Below are positions 5,256-57,350 of a DNA stretch of 64,000 nt, one piece after another. The DNA is taken from positions 133,610,001-133,674,000 of the forward strand of contig NC_043000.1 in assembly GCF_006345805.1 (NCBI RefSeq), read 5' to 3'. The DNA is from Octopus sinensis. Its lineage: Eukaryota. Each line of letters starts with the position of its first letter. Position 1 is the first letter of the stretch. The notes under the pieces were generated by a model. The model ran no database searches. It saw nothing but the letters and a program-made list of their open reading frames with translations, and had not been told where the DNA came from. Position numbers and translations under genes: made by a program.

Positions 5256-5280
5256 GTGTGTGTGTGTGTATATATATAGT

Positions 5281-5750
5281 AAAGTCTATTTGCTGACGTA
5301 AAGTGGCAGTCCTAGTTAGAACTGTGTTAATACCTTTTCTAGCCCCAAGAAAACATATTTTTCAACTGACTATCGACGCACAACTACGTCCTTATACATT
5401 GAACAAGGGAGCCAATGTCTCCACTCAGTCTTAAACGGTACCTGCGGACCAATGGTATCTGGGTTATTTCCTTTCATCGGCACAGGATAACCGTTGGCTA
5501 GAGATGGTAACACTAGGCTTTACTCGAAGTATATACTTTTAAAATGAAACACGGACAGTGATTTCGTTAGAAGAAAAGAAATTGGTTTTAAATCGCTGAG
5601 TGAGAAATAAGTAGTAACAGTACTACAGAATAAATCTATTTGCCAACGTAAAATGACAGTCCTGAGTAGGACGATGTTACTAGCTTTTTTTAGCCCTAGG
5701 AAAACATCTTTTTTCATTTGGCTATCGACGCACAAATGCGTTCATATATC
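5281..5750 (-). mobile_element. ~350-bp tandem unit (1.3 copies) carrying a type I hammerhead; retrozyme/PLE-pLTR-like
   Basis: tctatttg at 5285 and 5635 gives a 350-bp period with clearly homologous, diverged sequence. HHR at 5441-5486. Confidence 0.75.
5441..5486 (-). ncRNA. Type I hammerhead ribozyme, decayed
   Basis: Minus strand: CCTGTG-CCGATGA-AAGGAAATAACCCA-GATA-CCATTGGT-C-CGCAGG. Stem I is 6 bp, stem III is ACC/GGT, the triplet is GUC. The inverted copy at 5764 has an intact GAAA. Confidence 0.7.
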
Positions 5751-5752
5751 TC

Positions 5753-5990
5753 GAAATAATCCAGAAACCATTGGTTCGCAGGTACCGTTTAAGGCTGAGC
5801 AGAGGCATTAGCTCCCTTGTTCGAGGTATAAGGACGCAGTTGTGCGTCGATAGTCAACTGGAAAAGATGTTTTGTTGGGGCTAAAAAGCATAGAAACATC
5901 GTCGTAATCAGGATTGCCACTTTACGGTGGCAAATAGACTTTATTCTGTAGTACTGTTACTACTTAATTCTCGCTCAGAGATTCATAGAA
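5753..5990 (+). mobile_element. Inverted (head-to-head) arm of the 350-bp HHR unit
   Basis: Reverse complement of 5281-5470 plus 5590-5630. It starts inside HHR stem II (gaaataatccagaaaccattggttcgcagg). Confidence 0.8.
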
Positions 5991-14252: not shown

Positions 14253-14297
14253 TCATCACTGAGAAGACCAAACAGGTTGAAACACCGTGTCTGATGA
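14253..14297 (+). ncRNA. Type I hammerhead ribozyme with one core deviation
   Basis: TCATCA-CTGAGAA-GACC AAACA GGTT-GAAA-CACCGTGT-C-TGATGA. Stem I is 6 bp, stem II is 4 bp, stem III is ACAC/GTGT, the triplet is GUC. Confidence 0.7.
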
Positions 14298-14448: not shown

Positions 14449-14661
14449 GGCGAGCTGGCAGAAACGTTAGCACGCCGGGCGAAATGCGTTGCCGTATTTC
14501 GTCTGCCGTTACGTTCCGAGTTCAAATTCCGCCGAGGTCGACTTTGCCTTTCATCCTTCCGGGGTCGATAAATTAAGTACCAGTTACGCACTGGGGTCGA
14601 TGTAATCGACTTAATCCGTTTGTCTGTCCTTGTTTGTCTCCTCTGTGGGTAGTAAAGAAAT
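14449..14661 (+). mobile_element. Family B SINE
   Basis: ggcgagctggcagaaacgttagcacgccgg...gttccgagttcaaattccgccgaggtcgac...gtagtaaagaaa. Confidence 0.9.
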
Positions 14662-15260: not shown

Positions 15261-15921
15261 AAATTTATGTCGAATCGCCGAAACCCTATATCGCAAATGG
15301 AAAGAAAATTATTTTTTTAAAAAAACGTATGCTAATGAAATATCCGTCAGTTATTAGGTATATCCTGCTGACTATGTTGCTTAACTTTATTTCCCCATTT
15401 ACATGCTAAATGAACTGGGTTTGCGGTTAGATAGAAGACTGCCTTACCATTTAGCTTGCAACCTAACCACCGGTCAAGAACTGACATTCTGAAACAATAT
15501 ACTTTGTTTTAAATTTTGGATTAAAAAAAAGAGAAGGTGATTCTTCATCATAGATCTCATGCTGATTGCTGTCATCCACCCTCATTTCTCCTCCTTCTCC
15601 TCATCATCAACATCATTGCCAGTATTGTTGTCATTACTGTTCGCAAATGTGAAGAGACGGGACCGGTGTCTTGGTAACCAGCGTGATAAATCAGAACAAT
15701 AGAAAGTAATCGATGGCGTAATTTAATCAAATTCTAACCACTTTGTCTTGTGAAGGAATATACAAGAAATGTGAACGATAGACATTGTATTTCCTTGAGA
15801 TACAAAACTAACATTGAGGTCTTAAACTAAATACATAAAACATTTCATTAGAATTATTTAGTCAGTTATAAAGTATAAATTAGTGAAACAGCAGTTATCC
15901 ACACGAGTCAATGAAGATAAT

Positions 15922-16206
15922 GGATCTTTTCACTTTGACCGGCAGATTTTAAAAATAATTTCTTTGTAACTAAACACTTTTAAACTTCGTATACTGGTAG
16001 AATGTGTCACATAAAACATCTTTTTCTCTTGGCGTTCTTGAGAACATTATGTAGTTTGTAAGCTATTGCTTGTTTAATTTCTCGTATTTCGGCAATTTCA
16101 ACCAAAAGATGTTTTATGTGACACATTCTACCAGTATACGAAGTTTAAAAGTGTTTAGTTACAAAGAAATTATTTTAAAAATCTGCCGGTCAAAGTGAAA
16201 AGATCC
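15922..16206. mobile_element. MITE with ~103-bp TIRs and 8-bp TSD (Merlin/MULE/hAT-like, superfamily unresolved)
   Basis: Arms 15922-16024 and 16104-16206 have 1 mismatch; termini GGATC...GATCC; flanking direct repeat AAGATAAT. Confidence 0.9.
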
Positions 16207-17293
16207 AAGATAATTTCACATTGTTACTTGACCAACTCAAAAGATAGCAACCAAATGTCTATCAAATCAGACTTCACTGGCTTAAAGGAAGAGGAATTAC
16301 ATATTAGACTATGCACTAATAGATAGACGTGAAAACATGGCGGTGATGATGGAACGCATTTGAATTTAGGTGTGCTTGATCATGGCTAACTTGGGGCTAT
16401 TATTTACAGCCTCTTCATCTTGATGCTTGTACACCACCACCACCACCACCACTACATCACTGAAAAACTTGTCTTATTGTAAGATGAAAGCCAGCTGCGA
16501 TTATTCACGTCTTTTTATATTTTTTCACGGTCAATATTTAAACATTGACAATTTTTGTGTATGAATACAATCAATATCTTCAATATCTTTATGGTTGTGT
16601 TGAGTTCATTTGGATTGTCTGAGTACTTGGCTTGTCATGTTCTTCAAACTAAAGCCTTCGCAAAGGAGCGATGTTTTGTAAAATATGATAAACAAAATAT
16701 TCCTAAATGTACATATTATTCAGCTGAGCAAATGCTATTTCAATAACAAACAAGCAATAATGAAAAAAAAAAAAAAAAAGCCATGTCTGTTCTTAATCTC
16801 AAACCATCAGTTATGAATAGGTTGTTGTGTTGACAGTATCAGTTACGAAATAACGTAAAGATAGATGAACAGGCGATAAGTAAATAGACACAGATCGATA
16901 CGTAAAGTGATAGATAAAGAGATTAAAACAGAGAAAGAATAATAGAAAGGCGTGGAGATGAATAAGAAACTCTAGAACCATATATTTGCACAGAATATTT
17001 TGAAAAGTAAATAAGCTGTAGTAATCGGATGGTGTTTGTAACCAGTTTGTTGGTACGTGCGCACGCAACACATGTACGTATTACTCAGCTTCCTGGGCAA
17101 ATTTATCTACTATATTTGTGTTCTATTCCAGTTTGTGTTGTCTGCCTACTTTTCCCTACATATCGCCTACATTCTCTTAATTCTCTCTCTATCTCTCTCT
17201 CCACACACACACACATATATGTATATATATGTGTATATATATGTGTATATATATGTATGTATATATGAAAATATATATGTATGTATGTATATT

Positions 17294-17417: not shown

Positions 17418-17929
17418 ATAACATAAGGGGCTAAAACCATCTGAATATGGCTAGGGACAGGGCAGGGTGGTGGGGGTGTTACTGTTGCATTTAGCCCCAG
17501 GCGAACATCAACGTCGCCAGATAGGCTTGACACCATCACGGCGTCCTCTATCCTGCAAAGGGAGATAATTCCCCGATGAAGCGGATACCACACACGGACC
17601 TAGGTTTCAAGGTGTTTGCCTATTATCAACGTGTGGTAGGCATCGCTTCCTCGACGAAAAACTCACTCTGCAGGATATTTATATATAGATTTTCAAGCAA
17701 AATACATTTGCTGATTTCGAAAATCTGTTCGACAGCAATAATAATTCTCTAAATGAGATATAGACAGTAACTGCTCCATAACATAAGGGACTAAAGCCAT
17801 CTGAATATGGCTAGGGACAGGGCAGGGTGGTGGAGGTGTTACTGTTGCATTTAGCCCCAGGCGAACATCAACGTCGCCAGATAGGCTTGACACCATCACG
17901 GCGTCCTCTATCCTGCAAAGGGAGATAAT
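17418..17929 (-). mobile_element. 360-bp tandem unit (1.4 copies) with a type I hammerhead; retrozyme/PLE-pLTR-like
   Basis: ataacataaggg at 17418 and 17778 gives an exact 360-bp period; copies are nearly identical. Confidence 0.9.
17586..17638 (-). ncRNA. Type I hammerhead ribozyme, U3-A8 core variant
   Basis: Reverse complement of the motif at 18115-18167. Confidence 0.75.
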
Positions 17930-18375
17930 GCCCTGTCCCTAGCCATATTCAGATGGCTTTAGTCCCTTATGTTATGGAGCAGTTACTGTCTATATCTCAT
18001 TTAGAGAATTATTATTGCTGTCGAACAGATTTTCGAATTCAGCAAATGTATTTTGCTTGAAATTCTATATATAAATATCCTGCAGAGTGAGTTTTTCGTC
18101 GAGGAAGCGATGCCTACCACACGTTGATAATAGGCAAACACCTTGAAACCTAGGTCCGTGTGTGGTATCCGCTTCATCGGGGAATTATCTCCCTTTGCAG
18201 GATAGAGGACGCCGTGATGGTGTCAAGCCTATCTGGCGACGTTGATGTTCGCCTGGGGCTAAATGCAACAGTAACACCCCCACCACCCTGCCCTGTCCCT
18301 AGCCATATTCAGATGGCTTTAGTCCCTTATGTTATGGAGCAGTTACTGTCTATATCTCATTTAGAGAATTATTAT
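17930..18375 (+). mobile_element. Inverted (head-to-head) array of the same 360-bp unit (1.2 copies)
   Basis: gccctgtccct at 17930 and 18290 (period 360); reverse complement of the left array. Confidence 0.9.
18115..18167 (+). ncRNA. Type I hammerhead ribozyme, U3-A8 core variant
   Basis: TACCACACG-TTGATAA-TAGG CAAACA CCTT-GAAA-CCTAGGT-C-CGTGTGTGGTA. Stem III is the palindrome ACCTAGGT with GUC at 18154-18156. It lies within a 129-nt extended stem (18076-18204). Confidence 0.75.
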
Positions 18376-33998: not shown

Positions 33999-34190
33999 GG
34001 AGGCGCAATGGCCCAGTGGTTAGTGCAGCGGTCTCGTGGTCGTAAGATCGCGGTTTCGATTCCCAGACCGGGCATTGTGAGTGTTTATTGAGCAAAAACA
34101 CTTAAGCTCCACGAAGATCCGGCGGGGTGGGGGTGAATCCCGCTGTACTCTTTCACCACAACTTTCTCTCACACTTTCTTCCCACTTCTG
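33999..34190 (+). mobile_element. Family C tRNA-headed SINE, 5' part
   Basis: ggaggcgcaatggcccagtggttag...ggtttcgattccc (A and B boxes). Confidence 0.85.
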
Positions 34191-37020: not shown

Positions 37021-37404
37021 GGAAGCACTCCGTCGGTTACGACGATGAGGGTTCCGGTTGATCCGAATCAACGGAACAGCCTGCTCGTGAAATTAACGTG
37101 TAAGTGGCTGAGCACTCCACAGACACGTGCACCCTTAACGTAGTTCTCGGGGATATTCAGCGTGACACAGAGAGTGACAAGGCCGGCCCTTTGAAATACA
37201 GGTACAACAGAAACAGGAAGTAAGAGTGAGAGAAAGTTGTGGTGAAAGAGTACAGCAGGGATCACCACCATCCCCTGCCGGAGCCTCGTGGAGCTTTTAG
37301 GGTGTTTTCGCTCGATAAACACTCACAACGCCCGGTCTGGGAATCGAAACCGCGATCCTATGACCGCGAGTCCGCTGCCCTAACCACTGGGCCATTGCGC
37401 CTCC
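37021..37404 (-). mobile_element. Family C SINE, full length, with (CCAT)n tail
   Basis: tRNA-like head at the 37404 end; 3' part matches 1185-1405. Confidence 0.9.
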
Positions 37405-37429
37405 ACTACTTTATGGATAGTGCGGAAAT

Positions 37430-38071: not shown

Positions 38072-38538
38072 ACTTTATGGGTTAATATACTAAATTTTAA
38101 AATTTTCAATAAACTTTGAATTTTCGAAAATTAGCAATCAAATTGAAAAGATGCATTAAAGCATTAAAATATTAACGAAGGATTTTGTTTCTATCAATAC
38201 TGCAGCCTTTTTTCCACAAGACGATAGTTTCTTAAGGGAAGTAGATTTAAAAGTCGAAGGATCGTTGTCGTTGTTGATAACGGGCTATTTTTACTTTGTT
38301 TCTGTTGTTGCTAACTAATGCTAGAGATATTATTGTATTGCGTTATATATATATTGAATTGCGTTCCAGTCATGACCATCCAGTCTTTATATGAGTGTCT
38401 ACGTTTACCTTCTTTAAGATGGCAGGGTGTGAGAGAGATTTGGTCGGCTTTGTTGCTGCTACCAGTGGTGATGTCCTTGTAATAGCTTTGTCAGTTTCTT
38501 CTACGTCATCTGCACAACAATACATCATTAATGATATC

Positions 38539-38860
38539 ACTGTATATTAACAGTTATCGCCAAGCTAATATGGCAGTCCATAAATATAGGACGTAAGCTG
38601 TCGTTGATTAGCTCCAAGAGGCCATCGCCTATAGCTAGCTATATGACACACGAACGTGTGTCCATTATAACCTTCGAACAGGGGAAGTTAGCCTCTTCTC
38701 CTTGCTGGTCAAGCATCTGCAGACATGTTTCAGGGTATTTACCCTTTAGCAATGCAGAGTAGCCGAACCCAGCAGGCGTCGCTGCTGACCGTCTGTTCGA
38801 AGGAATATTTACCTAATTTCAGTGGAATACATCCACTGGTCTTCAAAAATGGAAATATTA
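38539..38860 (-). mobile_element. ~320-bp hammerhead-bearing unit (left arm of a head-to-head pair)
   Basis: 38539-38711 is the inverted counterpart of 41234-41406. Contains the HHR at 38716-38758, enclosed by ccttcgaacag/ctgttcgaagg (38671-38803). Confidence 0.8.
38716..38758 (-). ncRNA. Type I hammerhead ribozyme, U3-A8 core variant with A6C
   Basis: Minus strand: TCTGCA-TTGCTAA-AGGG TAAATA CCCT-GAAA-CATGT-C-TGCAGA. Stems of 6 and 4 bp, palindromic stem III ACATGT, GUC triplet. Confidence 0.8.
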
Positions 38861-39216
38861 TTATTTATTACACACATGTGAGTGAGAACACTTTGAGATA
38901 TTTTTGGTATCTAACATACGTCAGATACTGCGAGCGCTGCTTCTGATTGGTCAATCCATGGTGATGACCCGAGGTTACGGTGACGGCACTACTTTTGTCA
39001 TTCATAAGTTACAACTAAACTTTCACGAGCAGGTAGAATGTAGCCATGTAATTAAACAAACATACTATCTTTTTTATACCAGATATCACTTAAAGTCATA
39101 TACACATAAAATATAAAAATTTCTGGTCGTAATTCAATTTTTTGTTGCCAAAAAAATCACAACATATATCGTCTGCGCGTCGATACTCTTGCAGTGCAGG
39201 TAGATCTATCAACAAG

Positions 39217-40800
39217 ATGGCTACTGTTGTCGATATCAAGGTGAATGATTTTGTTAAGATTGATGGTAAAGATGGGGGAAGAGTGTTATCCGTTGTTCAA
39301 ACTCTTGGAACATACAGAATGTTCAATGTAAAGATCAATACTGGCCAAGTTCGACATGTTGCTGGATACAGGTTAACAAAGGTACCTGAAACAGTGTCAT
39401 CGACGAGTGGATTGTCATCGAACCCTACATTTAACATCCCTGATGAGGTGTACAATGATCTTCTTCGTGACGATTTCTTTGATGATAGCCATAATGATCT
39501 TGAATTTCAACCGAGGTATGATCATTCTGGAATAGATAAATTCGTTCAAGGTAATCAAAATAAAAACACTCTTCGGGAAACAAACTATGATGTTAAACGA
39601 TTGTTTGCTTTCATGGCGACAAATGGCGACACGTGTCCAATTGAATCTATCGACAAAAGCGAACTTCGTGACATTCTGTGTACTTTCTTTATCTCGTTGC
39701 GAAAGCCGGACAGTAGCAACTATGAACCTTCATCTTTGAGGGGAATGTTATCCAGTATTGAAAGATATCTGAAGTCAAAACACTACTCGACGTCACTATT
39801 CTCGGACGGGACATTCGTGAAACTACATGACGTACTAAAAACAAAGCAAAAGCTGTTGAAAAGTGAAGGAATGGGAAACCTACCTCGACGCGCGGAATCT
39901 CTCTCCGACGATGATATCAACAAGCTATGGGAATGTGACCAGCTCGGTCCGAACACACCTGAATCCATCCTCAACACGCTATGGTGGAACAACACCGTTC
40001 ACTTTGGTATCCGGAGTGTCAAACCTCACAACGACATGCGATGGGGCGACGTTTCTTTGCATGTTGACAATGAAGGCAAGGAATTCCTTCAGTTTAGGGA
40101 GCGACAGTCCCAAACTTGTCAAGGTGATAATCTCGACCATGCACGTAACATCTACCCAAAAGCATGGGCGACGAATGATGGGCGTTGTCCAGTTAACCTG
40201 TACAAGCGTTTTGCTGATCTGAGACCATCAGATTATTCATCGCCGAATTCACCATTTTATTTGGCCACCAACTGCAAAGATGCCTCCCATTCTCATCCCT
40301 GGTTTAAACGTCAACCGTTCGGTGTCAACAAACTAGGTACAATTATGAAAAGGATGGCTAAATCAGCTGGTTTGGACAATCGAAGATTCACGAACCATTC
40401 AGCACGCAAATACCTTATGCAGAAGCTCGCTGACCAGAACATTCCTCCAACTGAAATCATGCAGATATCTAGACATCGTAATGTGCAAAGCATCAATAGT
40501 TACAGCAATATTTCCATGGATCGTCATCGTGCCATCAGTAACATCCTTAGTAGCAACAACGACCAGCCTGGTTCGCTTGTACCTCCGTCTCACACAGCAG
40601 CAGCGAGTACAAGTGAACTCCCCTCCACCGTCAACGTTACGTCGAGTCAATCTCGGAACGCTGTCACTTGCTTTGGTTCATTGCACTCCATTTTCTCGGC
40701 TCCAATATATGGGGGAACAATCAATGTGAACTTCTTTGGTTCAGATGCAAAGCGACCTCGTCTGACATTGCTACTCGAAAACATGTTTGAGTATTATTAA
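39217..40800 (+). CDS. Crypton-like tyrosine recombinase (DUF3504 / KIAA1958-like), 527 aa from the ATG at 39217
   Basis: Motifs FFISLRKPD..YEPSSL, HFGIRS (R), CPVNLY, FTNHSARK (HxxR), ISRHRN (H) and SINSYS (Y). ATG context aacaagATGG; the track start at 39142 is a TTG. AATAAA at 41038. Confidence 0.92.
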   Translation: MATVVDIKVNDFVKIDGKDGGRVLSVVQTLGTYRMFNVKINTGQVRHVAGYRLTKVPETVSSTSGLSSNPTFNIPDEVYNDLLRDDFFDDSHNDLEFQPRYDHSGIDKFVQGNQNKNTLRETNYDVKRLFAFMATNGDTCPIESIDKSELRDILCTFFISLRKPDSSNYEPSSLRGMLSSIERYLKSKHYSTSLFSDGTFVKLHDVLKTKQKLLKSEGMGNLPRRAESLSDDDINKLWECDQLGPNTPESILNTLWWNNTVHFGIRSVKPHNDMRWGDVSLHVDNEGKEFLQFRERQSQTCQGDNLDHARNIYPKAWATNDGRCPVNLYKRFADLRPSDYSSPNSPFYLATNCKDASHSHPWFKRQPFGVNKLGTIMKRMAKSAGLDNRRFTNHSARKYLMQKLADQNIPPTEIMQISRHRNVQSINSYSNISMDRHRAISNILSSNNDQPGSLVPPSHTAAASTSELPSTVNVTSSQSRNAVTCFGSLHSIFSAPIYGGTINVNFFGSDAKRPRLTLLLENMFEYY

Positions 40801-41074
40801 AGTTATTGAAGATTCAATCTGTATTATGTATTTCTTGAACGTGAACTTGAATGTTAACAAAATGTTAAATAGTCATCAGTTATCAGTCATTTCACCTGAA
40901 AACTTAGCGCTATAAAGTCGGACTATCTTCCTGCGGCATGACATCTTTTACAGTTACACATTGTGACGTCACTGACGTGAAATCAAGCTGTATTCATGTG
41001 CGCTTCAACATGATGTGAAGAATTTAATTATTAGATTAATAAAATATGGTCGTTTATTCGTGTGTAATAAATAA

Positions 41075-41218
41075 AATACCAAACTCATTCCCTATGGATA
41101 CCGTATTTATTACAACTCGTGGCTTGTAAACGTATCTAACTCGCTTTCGCTCGTTAGATACGTTTACAAGCCACTCGTTGTAATAAATACGGTATCCATA
41201 GGGAACTCGTTTGGTATT
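41075..41218 (-). other. 144-nt terminal hairpin; minus strand has three tandem G.A pairs and a GCGAAAGC cap
   Basis: Arms 41075-41140 and 41153-41218 are Watson-Crick paired except at recurring CTCG motifs. Confidence 0.9.
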
Positions 41219-41233
41219 GTCTATTTCTAAATC

Positions 41234-41406
41234 TGATCAGCAAGGGGGAGCGGCTGACCTCCTCTGTTCGAAGGTTATAATGGACACAGGTGCGTGTGTC
41301 ATATAGCTAGCTAGAGGCGATGGCCTCTTGGAGCTAATCAACGGCAGCTTACGTCCTATATTTATGGACTGCCATATTAGCTTGGCAATAACTGTTAATA
41401 TCCAGT
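41234..41406 (+). mobile_element. Right (inverted) arm of the HHR unit at 38539-38860
   Basis: 173 bp with about 13 mismatches to the left arm; begins ~10 nt 3' of the predicted cleavage site. Confidence 0.85.
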
Positions 41407-41734: not shown

Positions 41735-41960
41735 CTTTGGTCAGCGCAAGATACGAGCTGGACGAAATGCTTAGCAGTATTTCGTCTGCCGTTACGTTCT
41801 GAGTTCAAATTCCGCCGAGGTCGACTTTGCTTTCATCATTTCGAGATCGATAAATTAAGTACCAGTTACGCACTGGGGTCGTTGTAATCGATTTGATCCC
41901 TTTGTCTGTCCGTGTTTGTCCCCTCTGTGTTTGGTCCCTTATGGGCAATAAAGAAATAGG
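41735..41960 (+). mobile_element. Family B SINE
   Basis: Core and tail (gggcaataaagaaatagg). Confidence 0.85.
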
Positions 41961-42694: not shown

Positions 42695-42750
42695 GCATAC
42701 ATACATACATACATACATATTTATGTGTGTGTGTGTGTGTATGTGTGTGT

Positions 42751-43050
42751 GGAGGCGCGATGGCCCAGTGGTTAGGGCAGTGGACTCACGGTCGTAGGAT
42801 CGCGGTTTCGATTCCCAAACCGGGCGCTGTGAGTGTTTATTGAGCGAAAACACCTAAAAGCTCCACGAGGCTCCCGCAGGGGGTGGTGGTGATCCCTGCT
42901 GTACTCTTTCACCACAACTTTCTCTCATTCTTTCTTCTGTTGGCCTGCTCGCTTAGCCCGCGGGGTGGCGTCATTTGAAGGCTAAAACAATGCGAAGCGC
43001 ATTGTGACCAGCGATGTGTAGCAACATCTGATGGCCTGGTCGGTCACGTG

Positions 43051-57016: not shown

Positions 57017-57208
57017 TATAATGATAAATCTCAGAGCGAGTTATAAACAGTAGCAGCAACACATCGTGACGTATATTTGCCATTTGAATATGGCTAACCC
57101 CTAAGCGTGGATGCTACTGTAGTTTGTAGCCCCCGGAGGACACCTCCTCCAGCTGGCTATAGACACACACACACACACACACACATATATAAATATATAT
57201 ATATATAA

Positions 57209-57350
57209 GGCGCAAGAGTGGGTGTATGGTAAGAAGCTTGCCTCCCAACCTCATTGTTCCGTGTTGAATCCCACTGCGTGGCATCTTGTGCAAGTGTCTT
57301 CTACTATATCCTCGAGCCGACCAATGCCTTACGAGTGAATTTGGTAGACG
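57209..57350 (+). mobile_element. Family A SINE 5' half
   Basis: ggcgcaagagtgggtgtatggtaagaagcttgcc...tttggtagacg. Confidence 0.8.

What the first reader, a model, noticed from the sequence alone, without database searches (positions are those of the whole stretch)
38539..41406. Crypton recombinase element sits at the inversion junction of a ribozyme element
Seen: 173-bp inverted arms (about 13 mismatches) belonging to the HHR unit flank the whole Crypton. Only ~15 bp (41219-41233) separate the Crypton hairpin from the right arm. Two readings are possible. (a) The Crypton inserted at the centre of a pre-existing head-to-head HHR insertion, perhaps favouring palindromic/cruciform DNA. (b) It is a composite element in which a YR gene is carried between ribozyme-bearing inverted repeats, loosely DIRS-like but with no RT. 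Reading (a) is more parsimonious; (b) would be new.
Basis: partly seen in the sequence, partly recalled or inferred. Interest (0 to 1): 0.75.

Follow-up and report, generated by a model that had tools for sequence, protein, structure and literature searches.

The report
Crypton transposon nested in old inverted repeat
A young tyrosine-recombinase ("Crypton") jumping gene of an octopus genome landed by chance between the two arms of an older inverted repeat; the arms are not part of the Crypton and contain no detectable hammerhead ribozyme, so this is an ordinary nested insertion.

Summary
The arms 38539-38711 and 41234-41406 are 173 nt long and 92% complementary, and they flank an intact Crypton.

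The composite reading (b) is refuted. Six other copies of this Crypton family in Octopus vulgaris and O. sinensis represent five independent insertions. All share the ends TTTATTACACAC...GGTATTGTCTAT (window 38864-41224), and none has the arms or any flanking inverted repeat.

The "HHR unit" label is not supported. Rfam finds no hammerhead in the arms or their relatives, even at E<=10. The look-alike motif (CUGAUCA...GAAGG) breaks the catalytic core and is not conserved in the family.

The arms belong to an old dispersed repeat family that often sits head-to-head; there are two more such loci in this window. The insertion is 9 bp from the right arm and 152 bp from the left, so it is not central. 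The arms had already diverged when the locus was inherited by O. vulgaris, which carries the same filled site. Nine independent insertions give no sign of a palindrome preference.

By-product: this mollusc Crypton lineage has a conserved 3' subterminal palindrome of about 145 bp. Its outermost stem is completed by the element's own left end. This feature may be undescribed.

The parts
38539..38711 (-). Left arm of the inverted repeat: a unit of an old dispersed octopus repeat family. It is not part of the Crypton.
   Evidence: Inverted pair I1. nhmmer links it to diverged copies at 5268-5453, 5604-5789, 5770-5970, 17437-17943, 18244-18355, 57040-57216 and L006:10714-10890. No Rfam ribozyme hit.
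38712..38863 (.). Left part of the spacer between the arms (152 bp). It is not palindromic. It holds a weak direct partial copy (38770-38810) of the inner end of the right arm, and it is AT-rich next to the insertion point.
   Evidence: Read directly from the sequence. The spacer scored against its own reverse complement (19) lies within the shuffle range (mean 15.6, max 21). The stretch is orthologous in O. vulgaris L002.
38864..41224 (+). Complete CryptonA-type DNA transposon, 2,361 bp, with ends TTTATTACACAC...GGTATTGTCTAT.
   Evidence: The ends are shared by L001/L004, L003, L005, L006 and L007, all with unrelated flanks.
38864..38875 (+). Left terminus TTTATTACACAC. TTTAT is the left copy of the short terminal direct repeat T(T/C)TAT. 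The 12-mer is the reverse complement of 41061-41072.
   Evidence: The pair co-varies in the second cephalopod family and in Littorina.
39217..40800 (+). Intact, intronless ORF for a 527-aa tyrosine recombinase.
   Evidence: Pfam hits: DUF3504 2e-25, Phage_integrase 3e-07, QRICH1 9e-07. R266, R397, H420 and Y429 are invariant in 15 homologues; H394 sits in the NHSARK box. 96% identical to O. sinensis XP_029643456.
41061..41072 (-). GTGTGTAATAAA, the inverted copy of the left terminus, just upstream of the hairpin.
41075..41218 (.). Conserved 3' subterminal palindrome of the Crypton: 66-nt arms and a 12-nt gap between them, with the invariant 14-nt centre CTCGCTTTCGCTCG.
   Evidence: DNA fold -64.8 kcal/mol, z = -18. 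Present in all family copies. 13 compensatory pairs against the second cephalopod family and 29 of 63 once Littorina is included. Also found in three metagenome contigs.
41219..41224 (+). Right terminus GTCTAT. TCTAT is the right copy of the terminal direct repeat.
   Evidence: The terminus GTATT(C/G)TCTAT is invariant from octopus to Littorina.
41225..41233 (.). Right part of the spacer, 9 bp (TTCTAAATC).
41234..41406 (+). Right arm of the inverted repeat, a unit of the same repeat family. Weak family similarity may continue for about 12-40 nt beyond 41406.

Best explanation
An autonomous-looking CryptonA DNA transposon (38864-41224) has inserted into the 161-bp non-palindromic spacer of an older head-to-head pair of repeat units, 9 bp from the right arm. 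It has one intact tyrosine-recombinase gene and no reverse transcriptase, LTRs or TIRs.

Shown:
- The element's ends.
- The absence of the arms from the other copies.
- The membership of the arms in a separate repeat family.
- The absence of a ribozyme match.
- The presence of the same filled site in O. vulgaris.

Inferred, following the Goodwin / Kojima-Jurka model for Cryptons:
- The element excised as a circle.
- Its recombinase then exchanged strands between the circle junction (...GTATTGTCTAT|TTTATTACACAC...) and an AT-rich T(T/C)TAT-like target.
- This leaves T(T/C)TAT at both ends and no target-site duplication.
- The predicted empty site is ...GGAAATATTATTA[T(T/C)TAT]TTCTAAATCTGATCAG...

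The arms play no part in the Crypton's mobility. Their position around it is coincidence in a genome region dense in inverted repeats.
For: 1. Five other independent insertions (L001=L004, L003, L005, L006, L007) share only window 38864-41224. Their flanks are unrelated and lack the arms.
2. The best inverted match between 500-bp flanks is 254 bits here. It is 16-37 bits at eight other independent insertions, including a second cephalopod family and Littorina. Random control positions have a median of 19 bits; 3.3% reach 50 bits and 0.7% reach 100 bits.
3. The arms match diverged units elsewhere in the window, including two other head-to-head loci without a Crypton: 5604-5789/5770-5970 and 17418-18335.
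4. The arms differ at 13 sites (7.5%), and nearly all of these differences are shared with the O. vulgaris orthologue L002. The locus is colinear with L002 over 13 kb. The Crypton is 98.4% identical to its paralogue L001.
5. The recombinase is intact, with catalytic residues in place.
6. In the sister family, copy L009 sits inside a repeat R whose uninterrupted copies give the empty site GGGTTCTTTTAT^ATGCACC. There is no duplication, and there is T(Y)TAT microhomology.
7. Published descriptions agree. Cryptons have only short terminal direct repeats that are similar across copies (PMC3212892, PMC8969392).
Against: - No empty allele of this particular site was available. The only orthologue retrieved (O. 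vulgaris) is also filled.
- The circular intermediate and the exact crossover position are inferred, not observed.
- With only nine insertion sites, a weak preference for structured or repeat DNA cannot be excluded. L008 lies beside a repeat, L009 lies inside one, and L008's flank inverted-repeat score is about the 95th percentile of controls.
- The repeat family of the arms could not be named, because no eukaryotic repeat library or octopus genome search was available.
Confidence: 0.9

Rival explanations
1. Composite element: the 173-bp arms are terminal inverted repeats of a mobile unit that carries the recombinase gene, loosely DIRS-like or MarCry-like.
For: The arms flank the gene. A precedent exists: MarCry-1_FO is a Crypton carried inside a Mariner with TIRs (PMC3212892).
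Against: - All six other copies end at 38864 and 41224 and lack the arms.
- There is no target-site duplication outside the arms.
- The arms are more diverged from each other (7.5%) than the Crypton is from its paralogues (1.6%).
- The arms are placed asymmetrically, 152 bp against 9 bp.
- There is no second ORF, reverse transcriptase or DDE transposase.
- The arm family occurs without a Crypton elsewhere.
Confidence: 0.02
2. Target preference: the Crypton recombinase favours palindromic or cruciform DNA, so landing inside an inverted repeat is not chance.
For: - This locus itself.
- The element carries a long palindrome at its own recombination end.
- L008 lies beside a dense repeat and L009 lies inside one.
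Against: - Eight of nine independent insertions have flank inverted-repeat scores within the control range (16-37 bits).
- The insertion lies in a non-palindromic spacer, not at the symmetry centre.
- The window is rich in inverted repeats. Roughly 1-4% of positions lie in or between such arms (my rough estimate), and control positions with a match of at least 50 bits make up 3.3%. One hit in nine is therefore unremarkable (about 6-25%).
- All sites share an AT-rich T(Y)TAT-like sequence instead.
Confidence: 0.07
3. The arms are units of a hammerhead-ribozyme-bearing repeat (retrozyme-like), but with a divergent ribozyme that Rfam misses.
For: - The inner end of each arm reads CUGAUCA-[stem GGGGAG/CUCCUC]-GUUCGAAGG, which has the outline of a hammerhead.
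- The family keeps hairpins with covariation, so it is or was an RNA-structured repeat.
- Units can be tandem or inverted.
Against: - There is no hammerhead, twister, HDV or other ribozyme hit at E<=10 in the arms or in related units.
- The motif breaks the invariant core: G8 becomes C, and GAAA becomes GAAG. Established hammerhead biochemistry holds that G8 and A15.1 are essential.
- The left arm and the other family members differ again at these positions (CUUGACCA, CUGAGCAG...UUCGAGG, CUGAGUGG...UUCAAUG). The core is therefore not conserved.
Confidence: 0.04
4. The inverted arms were created by the Crypton itself, for example by recombinase-mediated rearrangement or inverted duplication of flank at insertion.
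For: The right arm starts only 9 bp from the Crypton end.
Against: - The arms are 7.5% diverged, and those differences predate the species split, whereas the Crypton is young.
- The same family forms inverted pairs without a Crypton.
- No other copy shows flank duplication.
Confidence: 0.02

Closest known systems
CryptonA elements (animal Cryptons; Kojima & Jurka 2011, PMC3212892)
   Same: - A single ORF for a DUF3504-type tyrosine recombinase with a full catalytic set.
- No reverse transcriptase, LTRs or TIRs.
- Low copy number.
- A short terminal direct repeat that is the same in all copies (T(T/C)TAT).
- No target-site duplication, shown for the sister family.
   Different: That paper reports no terminal repeats of any kind in animal Cryptons. 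This lineage has a conserved subterminal palindrome of about 145 bp at the 3' end, and the 12-nt left terminus is the inverted copy of the sequence just upstream of that palindrome.
MarCry-1_FO (Crypton fused inside a Mariner, Fusarium; PMC3212892)
   Same: A Crypton recombinase gene lying between inverted repeats of another element. This is the known precedent for reading (b).
   Different: MarCry copies all carry the 16-bp TIRs, TA duplications and a DDE transposase. Here the arms occur at one locus only, there is no duplication and no transposase, and the other Crypton copies lack the arms.
DIRS1-like retrotransposons
   Same: A tyrosine recombinase, with inverted repeats around the coding region.
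   Different: DIRS elements encode RT/RNase H and have ITRs plus an internal complementary region. None of these is present, and the recombinase belongs to the Crypton/DUF3504 clade.
Hammerhead-bearing repeats (retrozymes, Penelope-like element termini)
   Same: Short structured repeat units that can be tandem or inverted.
   Different: No hammerhead core or covariance-model match in the arm family.
Foldback / long-TIR non-autonomous repeats
   Same: The arm family recurs as head-to-head pairs (5604-5970, 17418-18335, and this locus).
   Different: No target-site duplication or fixed outer ends could be shown. It may simply be pairs of units.

Membership tests
Crypton (CryptonA) | Encodes a tyrosine recombinase with the catalytic R...H-x-x-R...H/W...Y set | tested here: met
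   Pfam Phage_integrase and DUF3504. R266, R397, H420 and Y429 are invariant in 15 homologues; H394 lies in the NHSARK box.
Crypton (CryptonA) | No reverse transcriptase, LTRs or TIRs; a single gene | tested here: met
   There is only one long ORF between 38864 and 41224. The family ends are shared without the arms.
Crypton (CryptonA) | Short direct repeat at both termini, similar across copies (microhomology, not a duplication) | tested here: met
   TTTAT at the left and TCTAT at the right in all copies. L009's empty site, known from other R copies, shows no duplication.
Crypton (CryptonA) | Multiple copies at unrelated loci with identical ends (mobility) | tested here: met
   Six independent loci counting this one, all sampled in O. 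vulgaris; the L001/L004 site is also filled in O. sinensis and the window's site also in the window's species. Copies are 92-98% identical.
Crypton (CryptonA) | Excision as a circle and recombinase-mediated integration | not testable with these tools
   Only indirect evidence: metagenome contig L013 has a right end abutting a left-end-like sequence.
Hammerhead ribozyme | Match to Rfam hammerhead covariance models | tested here: not met
   No hit in the arms or in related units at gathering score or at E<=10.
Hammerhead ribozyme | Conserved core CUGANGA ... GAAA around three helices | tested here: not met
   No CTGANGA on either strand of the arms. The nearest motif, CUGAUCA...GAAGG, is not conserved between the arms or across the family.
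Composite TIR-bounded element (MarCry-like) | Arms present at the ends of other copies | tested here: not met
   Absent from L001, L003, L004, L005, L006 and L007.
Composite TIR-bounded element (MarCry-like) | Target-site duplication outside the arms | tested here: not met
   The flanks read ...GATATC | ACCGCT..., with no direct repeat. The O. vulgaris orthologue is the same.
DIRS-like retrotransposon | RT/RNase H (and methyltransferase) genes, plus ITRs with an internal complementary region | tested here: not met
   No such ORF or Pfam hit.
Foldback / MITE-like repeat (for the arms) | Inverted arms recurring at several loci | tested here: met
   Head-to-head pairs at 5604-5970 and 17418-18335 as well as here.
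Foldback / MITE-like repeat (for the arms) | Fixed outer termini with a target-site duplication | tested here: inconclusive
   No duplication was seen. The outer boundaries differ between the arms, and the copies are too diverged (about 55-60%) to define termini.

The most novel reading that the evidence does not exclude

What the evidence shows:
- It is a palindrome of about 145 bp with an invariant, asymmetric 14-nt centre (CTCGCTTTCGCTCG) and an invariant terminus GTATT(C/G)TCTAT.
- Its stem is maintained by 29 compensatory pair changes from octopus to Littorina.
- The outermost 12 bp of the stem are supplied by the element's own left end. The palindrome is therefore complete only when right and left ends are joined, in a circle or a tandem.
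- The strand-exchange site then falls in an internal loop of that structure.

This would give the first defined recombination-site architecture (attP-like) for an animal Crypton.
Probability: 0.5. Interest if true: 0.55.

Novelty: new member of a known kind. Interest (0 to 1): 0.3.

Why it matters
As posed, the finding does not matter much. It is a nested transposon insertion, not a new ribozyme-recombinase composite, and it gives no support for cruciform targeting.

Two things are useful:
- It documents an apparently recently active, intact Crypton family in Octopus, with exact ends and a microhomology target. Cryptons are rare and their boundaries are notoriously hard to define.
- It exposes a conserved split palindrome at the recombination end. 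This could make the Crypton mechanism (circle formation and site recognition) experimentally testable, which has not been possible for animal Cryptons.

Tried and rejected
- **Rfam scans.** I scanned the whole window (gathering score and E<=1), the locus (E<=10), the left arm plus spacer alone, and the 5.2-6.0 kb relatives. None gave a ribozyme hit. A CTGANGA regex on both strands of the arms found nothing.
- **Link to the 14253 hammerhead-like hit.** BLAST and nhmmer showed no relation to the arms.
- **tRNA origin of the arms.** ARAGORN found no tRNA in the window.
- **A larger ancient palindrome around the locus.** The pair 37212-37406 / 42749-42941 (93%) looked suggestive, but the DNA between it and the arms is not colinear and a third copy lies at 33999-34148. 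It is best read as two SINE-like copies in opposite orientation.
- **Exact look-up of the window's own protein.** It is not on record, so the window's assembly and species could not be named. The nearest locus is O. vulgaris OX597817.1.
- **Empty allele.** The only orthologue obtained is filled. No tool searches octopus genomes by DNA.
- **L008 flanking inverted repeats (35 nt, 97%).** These first looked like a second Crypton within arms. They turned out to be fragments of an abundant local repeat R, and L008's allele-like duplicate L010 adds no independent evidence.
- **Purifying selection on the ORF between orthologues.** There are 5 synonymous and 17 non-synonymous codon differences, so this copy shows no sign of domestication.
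Full report
**1. The observation.**
The window holds inverted arms at 38539-38711 and 41234-41406. They are 173 nt long and 92% complementary, with 13 mismatches. Between them lies one long ORF, 39217-40800, encoding 527 aa. It matches Pfam DUF3504 (2e-25), Phage_integrase (3e-07) and QRICH1. Near its 3' side is a hairpin with 66-nt arms at 41075-41218. Folded as DNA it gives -64.8 kcal/mol with z = -18.

**2. Where the window comes from.**
The closest protein is Octopus sinensis XP_029643456, at 96% identity. Its 90% cluster holds ten O. vulgaris gene models on several chromosomes. Locus L002 (O. vulgaris OX597817.1) is colinear with the window over 13 kb, so it is the orthologous locus. It carries the same Crypton and the same arms. 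The window is thus from an octopus closely related to O. vulgaris. The exact species could not be named.

**3. True limits of the Crypton.**
Six further copies were fetched:
- L001 (O. sinensis) and L004 (O. vulgaris), which are the same site in two species
- L003, L005 and L006
- L007, which is internally deleted

All share window 38864-41224 and nothing outside it. The element begins TTTATTACACAC and ends GGTATT(G/C)TCTAT. The spacer between the arms is therefore 152 bp on the left (38712-38863) and 9 bp on the right (41225-41233). The insertion is not at the centre, and the spacer itself is not palindromic.

**4. Reading (b) is refuted.**
None of the five other independent insertions has the arms. 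The best inverted match between 500-bp flanks compares as follows:

| Sites | Best inverted match |
|---|---|
| This locus | 254 bits |
| Other five octopus sites | 16-19 bits |
| L008, L009 (second cephalopod family) and L011 (Littorina) | 21-37 bits |
| Random control positions in the same DNA | median 19 bits; 3.3% reach 50 bits; 0.7% reach 100 bits |

There is no target-site duplication outside the arms. There is no second gene.

**5. What the arms are.**
A profile search links them to diverged units (about 55-60% identity) at several other places:
- 5268-5453 (-)
- 5604-5789 (-)
- 5770-5970 (+)
- 17437-17943 (-)
- 18244-18355 (+)
- 57040-57216 (-)
- L006:10714-10890

Two of these places are themselves head-to-head pairs without any Crypton. 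The inverted arrangement is therefore a habit of this repeat family. The family keeps hairpins with compensatory changes in 7 of 14 predicted pairs, which suggests an RNA-structured repeat.

The two arms differ at 13 sites, and nearly all of these differences are shared by the O. vulgaris orthologue. The arms were therefore already diverged before the two species separated. By contrast, the Crypton is 98.4% identical to a paralogue at another locus. The order of events is arms first, Crypton later.

**6. No ribozyme.**
Rfam finds nothing at the gathering threshold in the whole window. At E<=10 it finds no hammerhead or other self-cleaving family in the locus, in the left arm plus spacer alone, or in the related units at 5.2-6.0 kb. 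Neither strand of the arms contains CUGANGA.

The probable source of the label is the inner end of the right arm, CUGAUCA-[GGGGAG...CUCCUC]-GUUCGAAGG. It has the outline of a hammerhead, but it changes G8 and the GAAA box. Both are essential in established hammerhead biochemistry. The left arm and the other family members differ again at those positions.

The one hammerhead-like hit in the window is at 14253-14297. It scores 31.9 bits against a cut-off of 34, reads CUGAGAA, and is unrelated to the arms.

**7. How the Crypton most likely got there.**
The recombinase keeps R266, R397, H420 and Y429, which are invariant across 15 homologues, and H394 lies in the NHSARK box. All copies carry T(T/C)TAT at both ends: TTTAT on the left and TCTAT on the right.

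In a second cephalopod family (59% amino-acid identity; ENA ERZ25071447), copy L009 lies inside a repeat R. Uninterrupted copies of R give the empty site GGGTTCTTTTAT^ATGCACC. The filled site shows no duplication, and it shows T(Y)TAT microhomology.

This fits the published Crypton model: excision as a circle, then recombination at a short sequence shared with the target, leaving a short repeat that is the same in all copies (PMC3212892, PMC8969392, PMC13465315). The circle and the exact crossover are inferred, not shown. By inference, the empty site here was ...GGAAATATTATTA-T(T/C)TAT-TTCTAAATCTGATCAG..., an AT-rich patch that happens to lie next to the right arm.

**8. Is there a preference for palindromes?**
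There is no support for one. Only one of nine independent insertions has flanking inverted repeats. The window is rich in inverted repeats. With control rates of 0.7-3.3%, one hit in nine is expected in roughly 6-25% of such samples. A weak preference cannot be excluded with nine sites.

**9. No sign of domestication.**
Between the window and its O. vulgaris orthologue, the ORF differs at 5 synonymous and 17 non-synonymous codons.

**10. By-product: the hairpin.**
The hairpin is part of the Crypton, and it is better conserved than the gene:
- It is 79.5% identical in nucleotides to the second cephalopod family, where the coding DNA is 69% identical.
- A palindrome of the same size and position lies about 370 bp downstream of the homologous gene in Littorina saxatilis (L011 4613-4763). 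A profile of the cephalopod hairpins finds it at E = 1e-6.
- Three metagenome contigs carry it too.
- The 14-nt centre CTCGCTTTCGCTCG and the terminus GTATT(C/G)TCTAT are invariant.
- 13 stem pairs show compensatory double changes between the two cephalopod families, and 29 of 63 do once Littorina is added.

In addition, the 12 nt just upstream of the hairpin (GTGTGTAATAAA, 41061-41072) are the reverse complement of the element's left end (TTTATTACACAC). This pairing co-varies in all three lineages:

| Lineage | Left-end sequence |
|---|---|
| Octopus | TTTATTACACAC |
| Other cephalopod | TTCTTACAC(A)AC |
| Littorina | TTATCCTTCATAC |

Joining the right end to the left end in silico lengthens the stem by 12 bp and puts the junction GTCTAT in an internal loop. 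Contig L013 shows a right end directly followed by a left-end-like sequence, which is probably a tandem of short non-autonomous derivatives.

Kojima & Jurka state that they found no terminal repeats in animal Cryptons. Three literature searches for Crypton terms, one including 'hairpin', listed no paper whose title or abstract describes this structure; I opened only the four cited here. Repbase and Dfam could not be consulted, so I cannot say it is undescribed.

**11. Verdict.**
The finding is a real but ordinary nested insertion. A young CryptonA transposon sits in the spacer of an older head-to-head repeat pair. The ribozyme label and the composite reading are wrong, and a palindrome preference is unsupported. 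The only part that deserves follow-up is the conserved split palindrome of the Crypton itself.

Noticed in passing
window 41061-41224 with 38864-38875; L008 4855-5020; L009 4768-4932; L011 4606-4767; L012-L014: The Crypton lineage has a conserved 3' palindrome with an invariant centre CTCGCTTTCGCTCG and an invariant terminus GTATT(C/G)TCTAT. 29 of 63 stem pairs show compensatory changes. The outer 12-bp stem is completed by the element's own left end (a split palindrome). I found no description of this in the papers I could read.
   Followed up: partly
window 14253-14297 (+): A sub-threshold type I hammerhead-like motif (Rfam 31.9 bits against a cut-off of 34), with CUGAGAA in place of CUGANGA. 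It is unrelated to the arms.
   Followed up: partly
window 17418-17824 / 17929-18335, and 17738-17933 / 18180-18375: A very young complex palindrome (407-nt arms, 99% identical, 104-nt spacer). It contains units of the same repeat family as the arms and is flanked by long microsatellite tracts (17-21 kb).
   Followed up: partly
window 15921-16024 / 16104-16207: Another near-perfect inverted repeat (104 nt, 99%, 79-nt spacer). Not examined.
   Followed up: no
window 5268-5970: Three units of the arm family: two in the same orientation about 336 bp apart, and a head-to-head pair that meets at a palindromic centre (about 5770) with no spacer.
   Followed up: partly
window 37212-37406 / 42749-42941, and 33999-34148: An inverted pair of SINE-like copies (93% identical) lies roughly symmetrically outside the arms. 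A third copy elsewhere and the lack of colinearity argue against a large ancient palindrome.
   Followed up: yes
window 14460-14650 and 41740-41960: Copies of an abundant SINE-like repeat (…GTCGACTTTGCCTTTCATCC…GATAAATTAAGTACCAG…). ARAGORN finds no intact tRNA in the window.
   Followed up: no
L008 2866-2891 versus L009 2760-2780: A segment of about 20 bp just inside the left end of the second Crypton family is inverted between two copies (GTGTAGGAGATCACCGTTG versus CAACGGTGATCTCCTACAC).
   Followed up: no
L013 57-743 and 744-1298: A metagenome contig holds two short elements without an ORF, each with Crypton-like left and right ends, lying head to tail. These are probably non-autonomous Crypton derivatives in tandem, and they give a right-end/left-end junction.
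   Followed up: partly
window 38349-41110 versus L002: Between the orthologous loci, substitutions are 0.6-1.2% across the left arm, spacer and Crypton up to the hairpin (38349-41110), but 3.5-5.5% in the left flank and 0.6-3.4% in the right. The cause of this uneven divergence is unexplained.
   Followed up: no
P0035 (O. vulgaris CAI9731261): An annotated gene model joins the first 99 aa of this Crypton protein to Pfam PAX (PF00292), HTH_32 (PF13565) and DUF4817 (PF16087) domains, which I read as transposase-type. It is probably a chimeric prediction across nested transposons.
   Followed up: no
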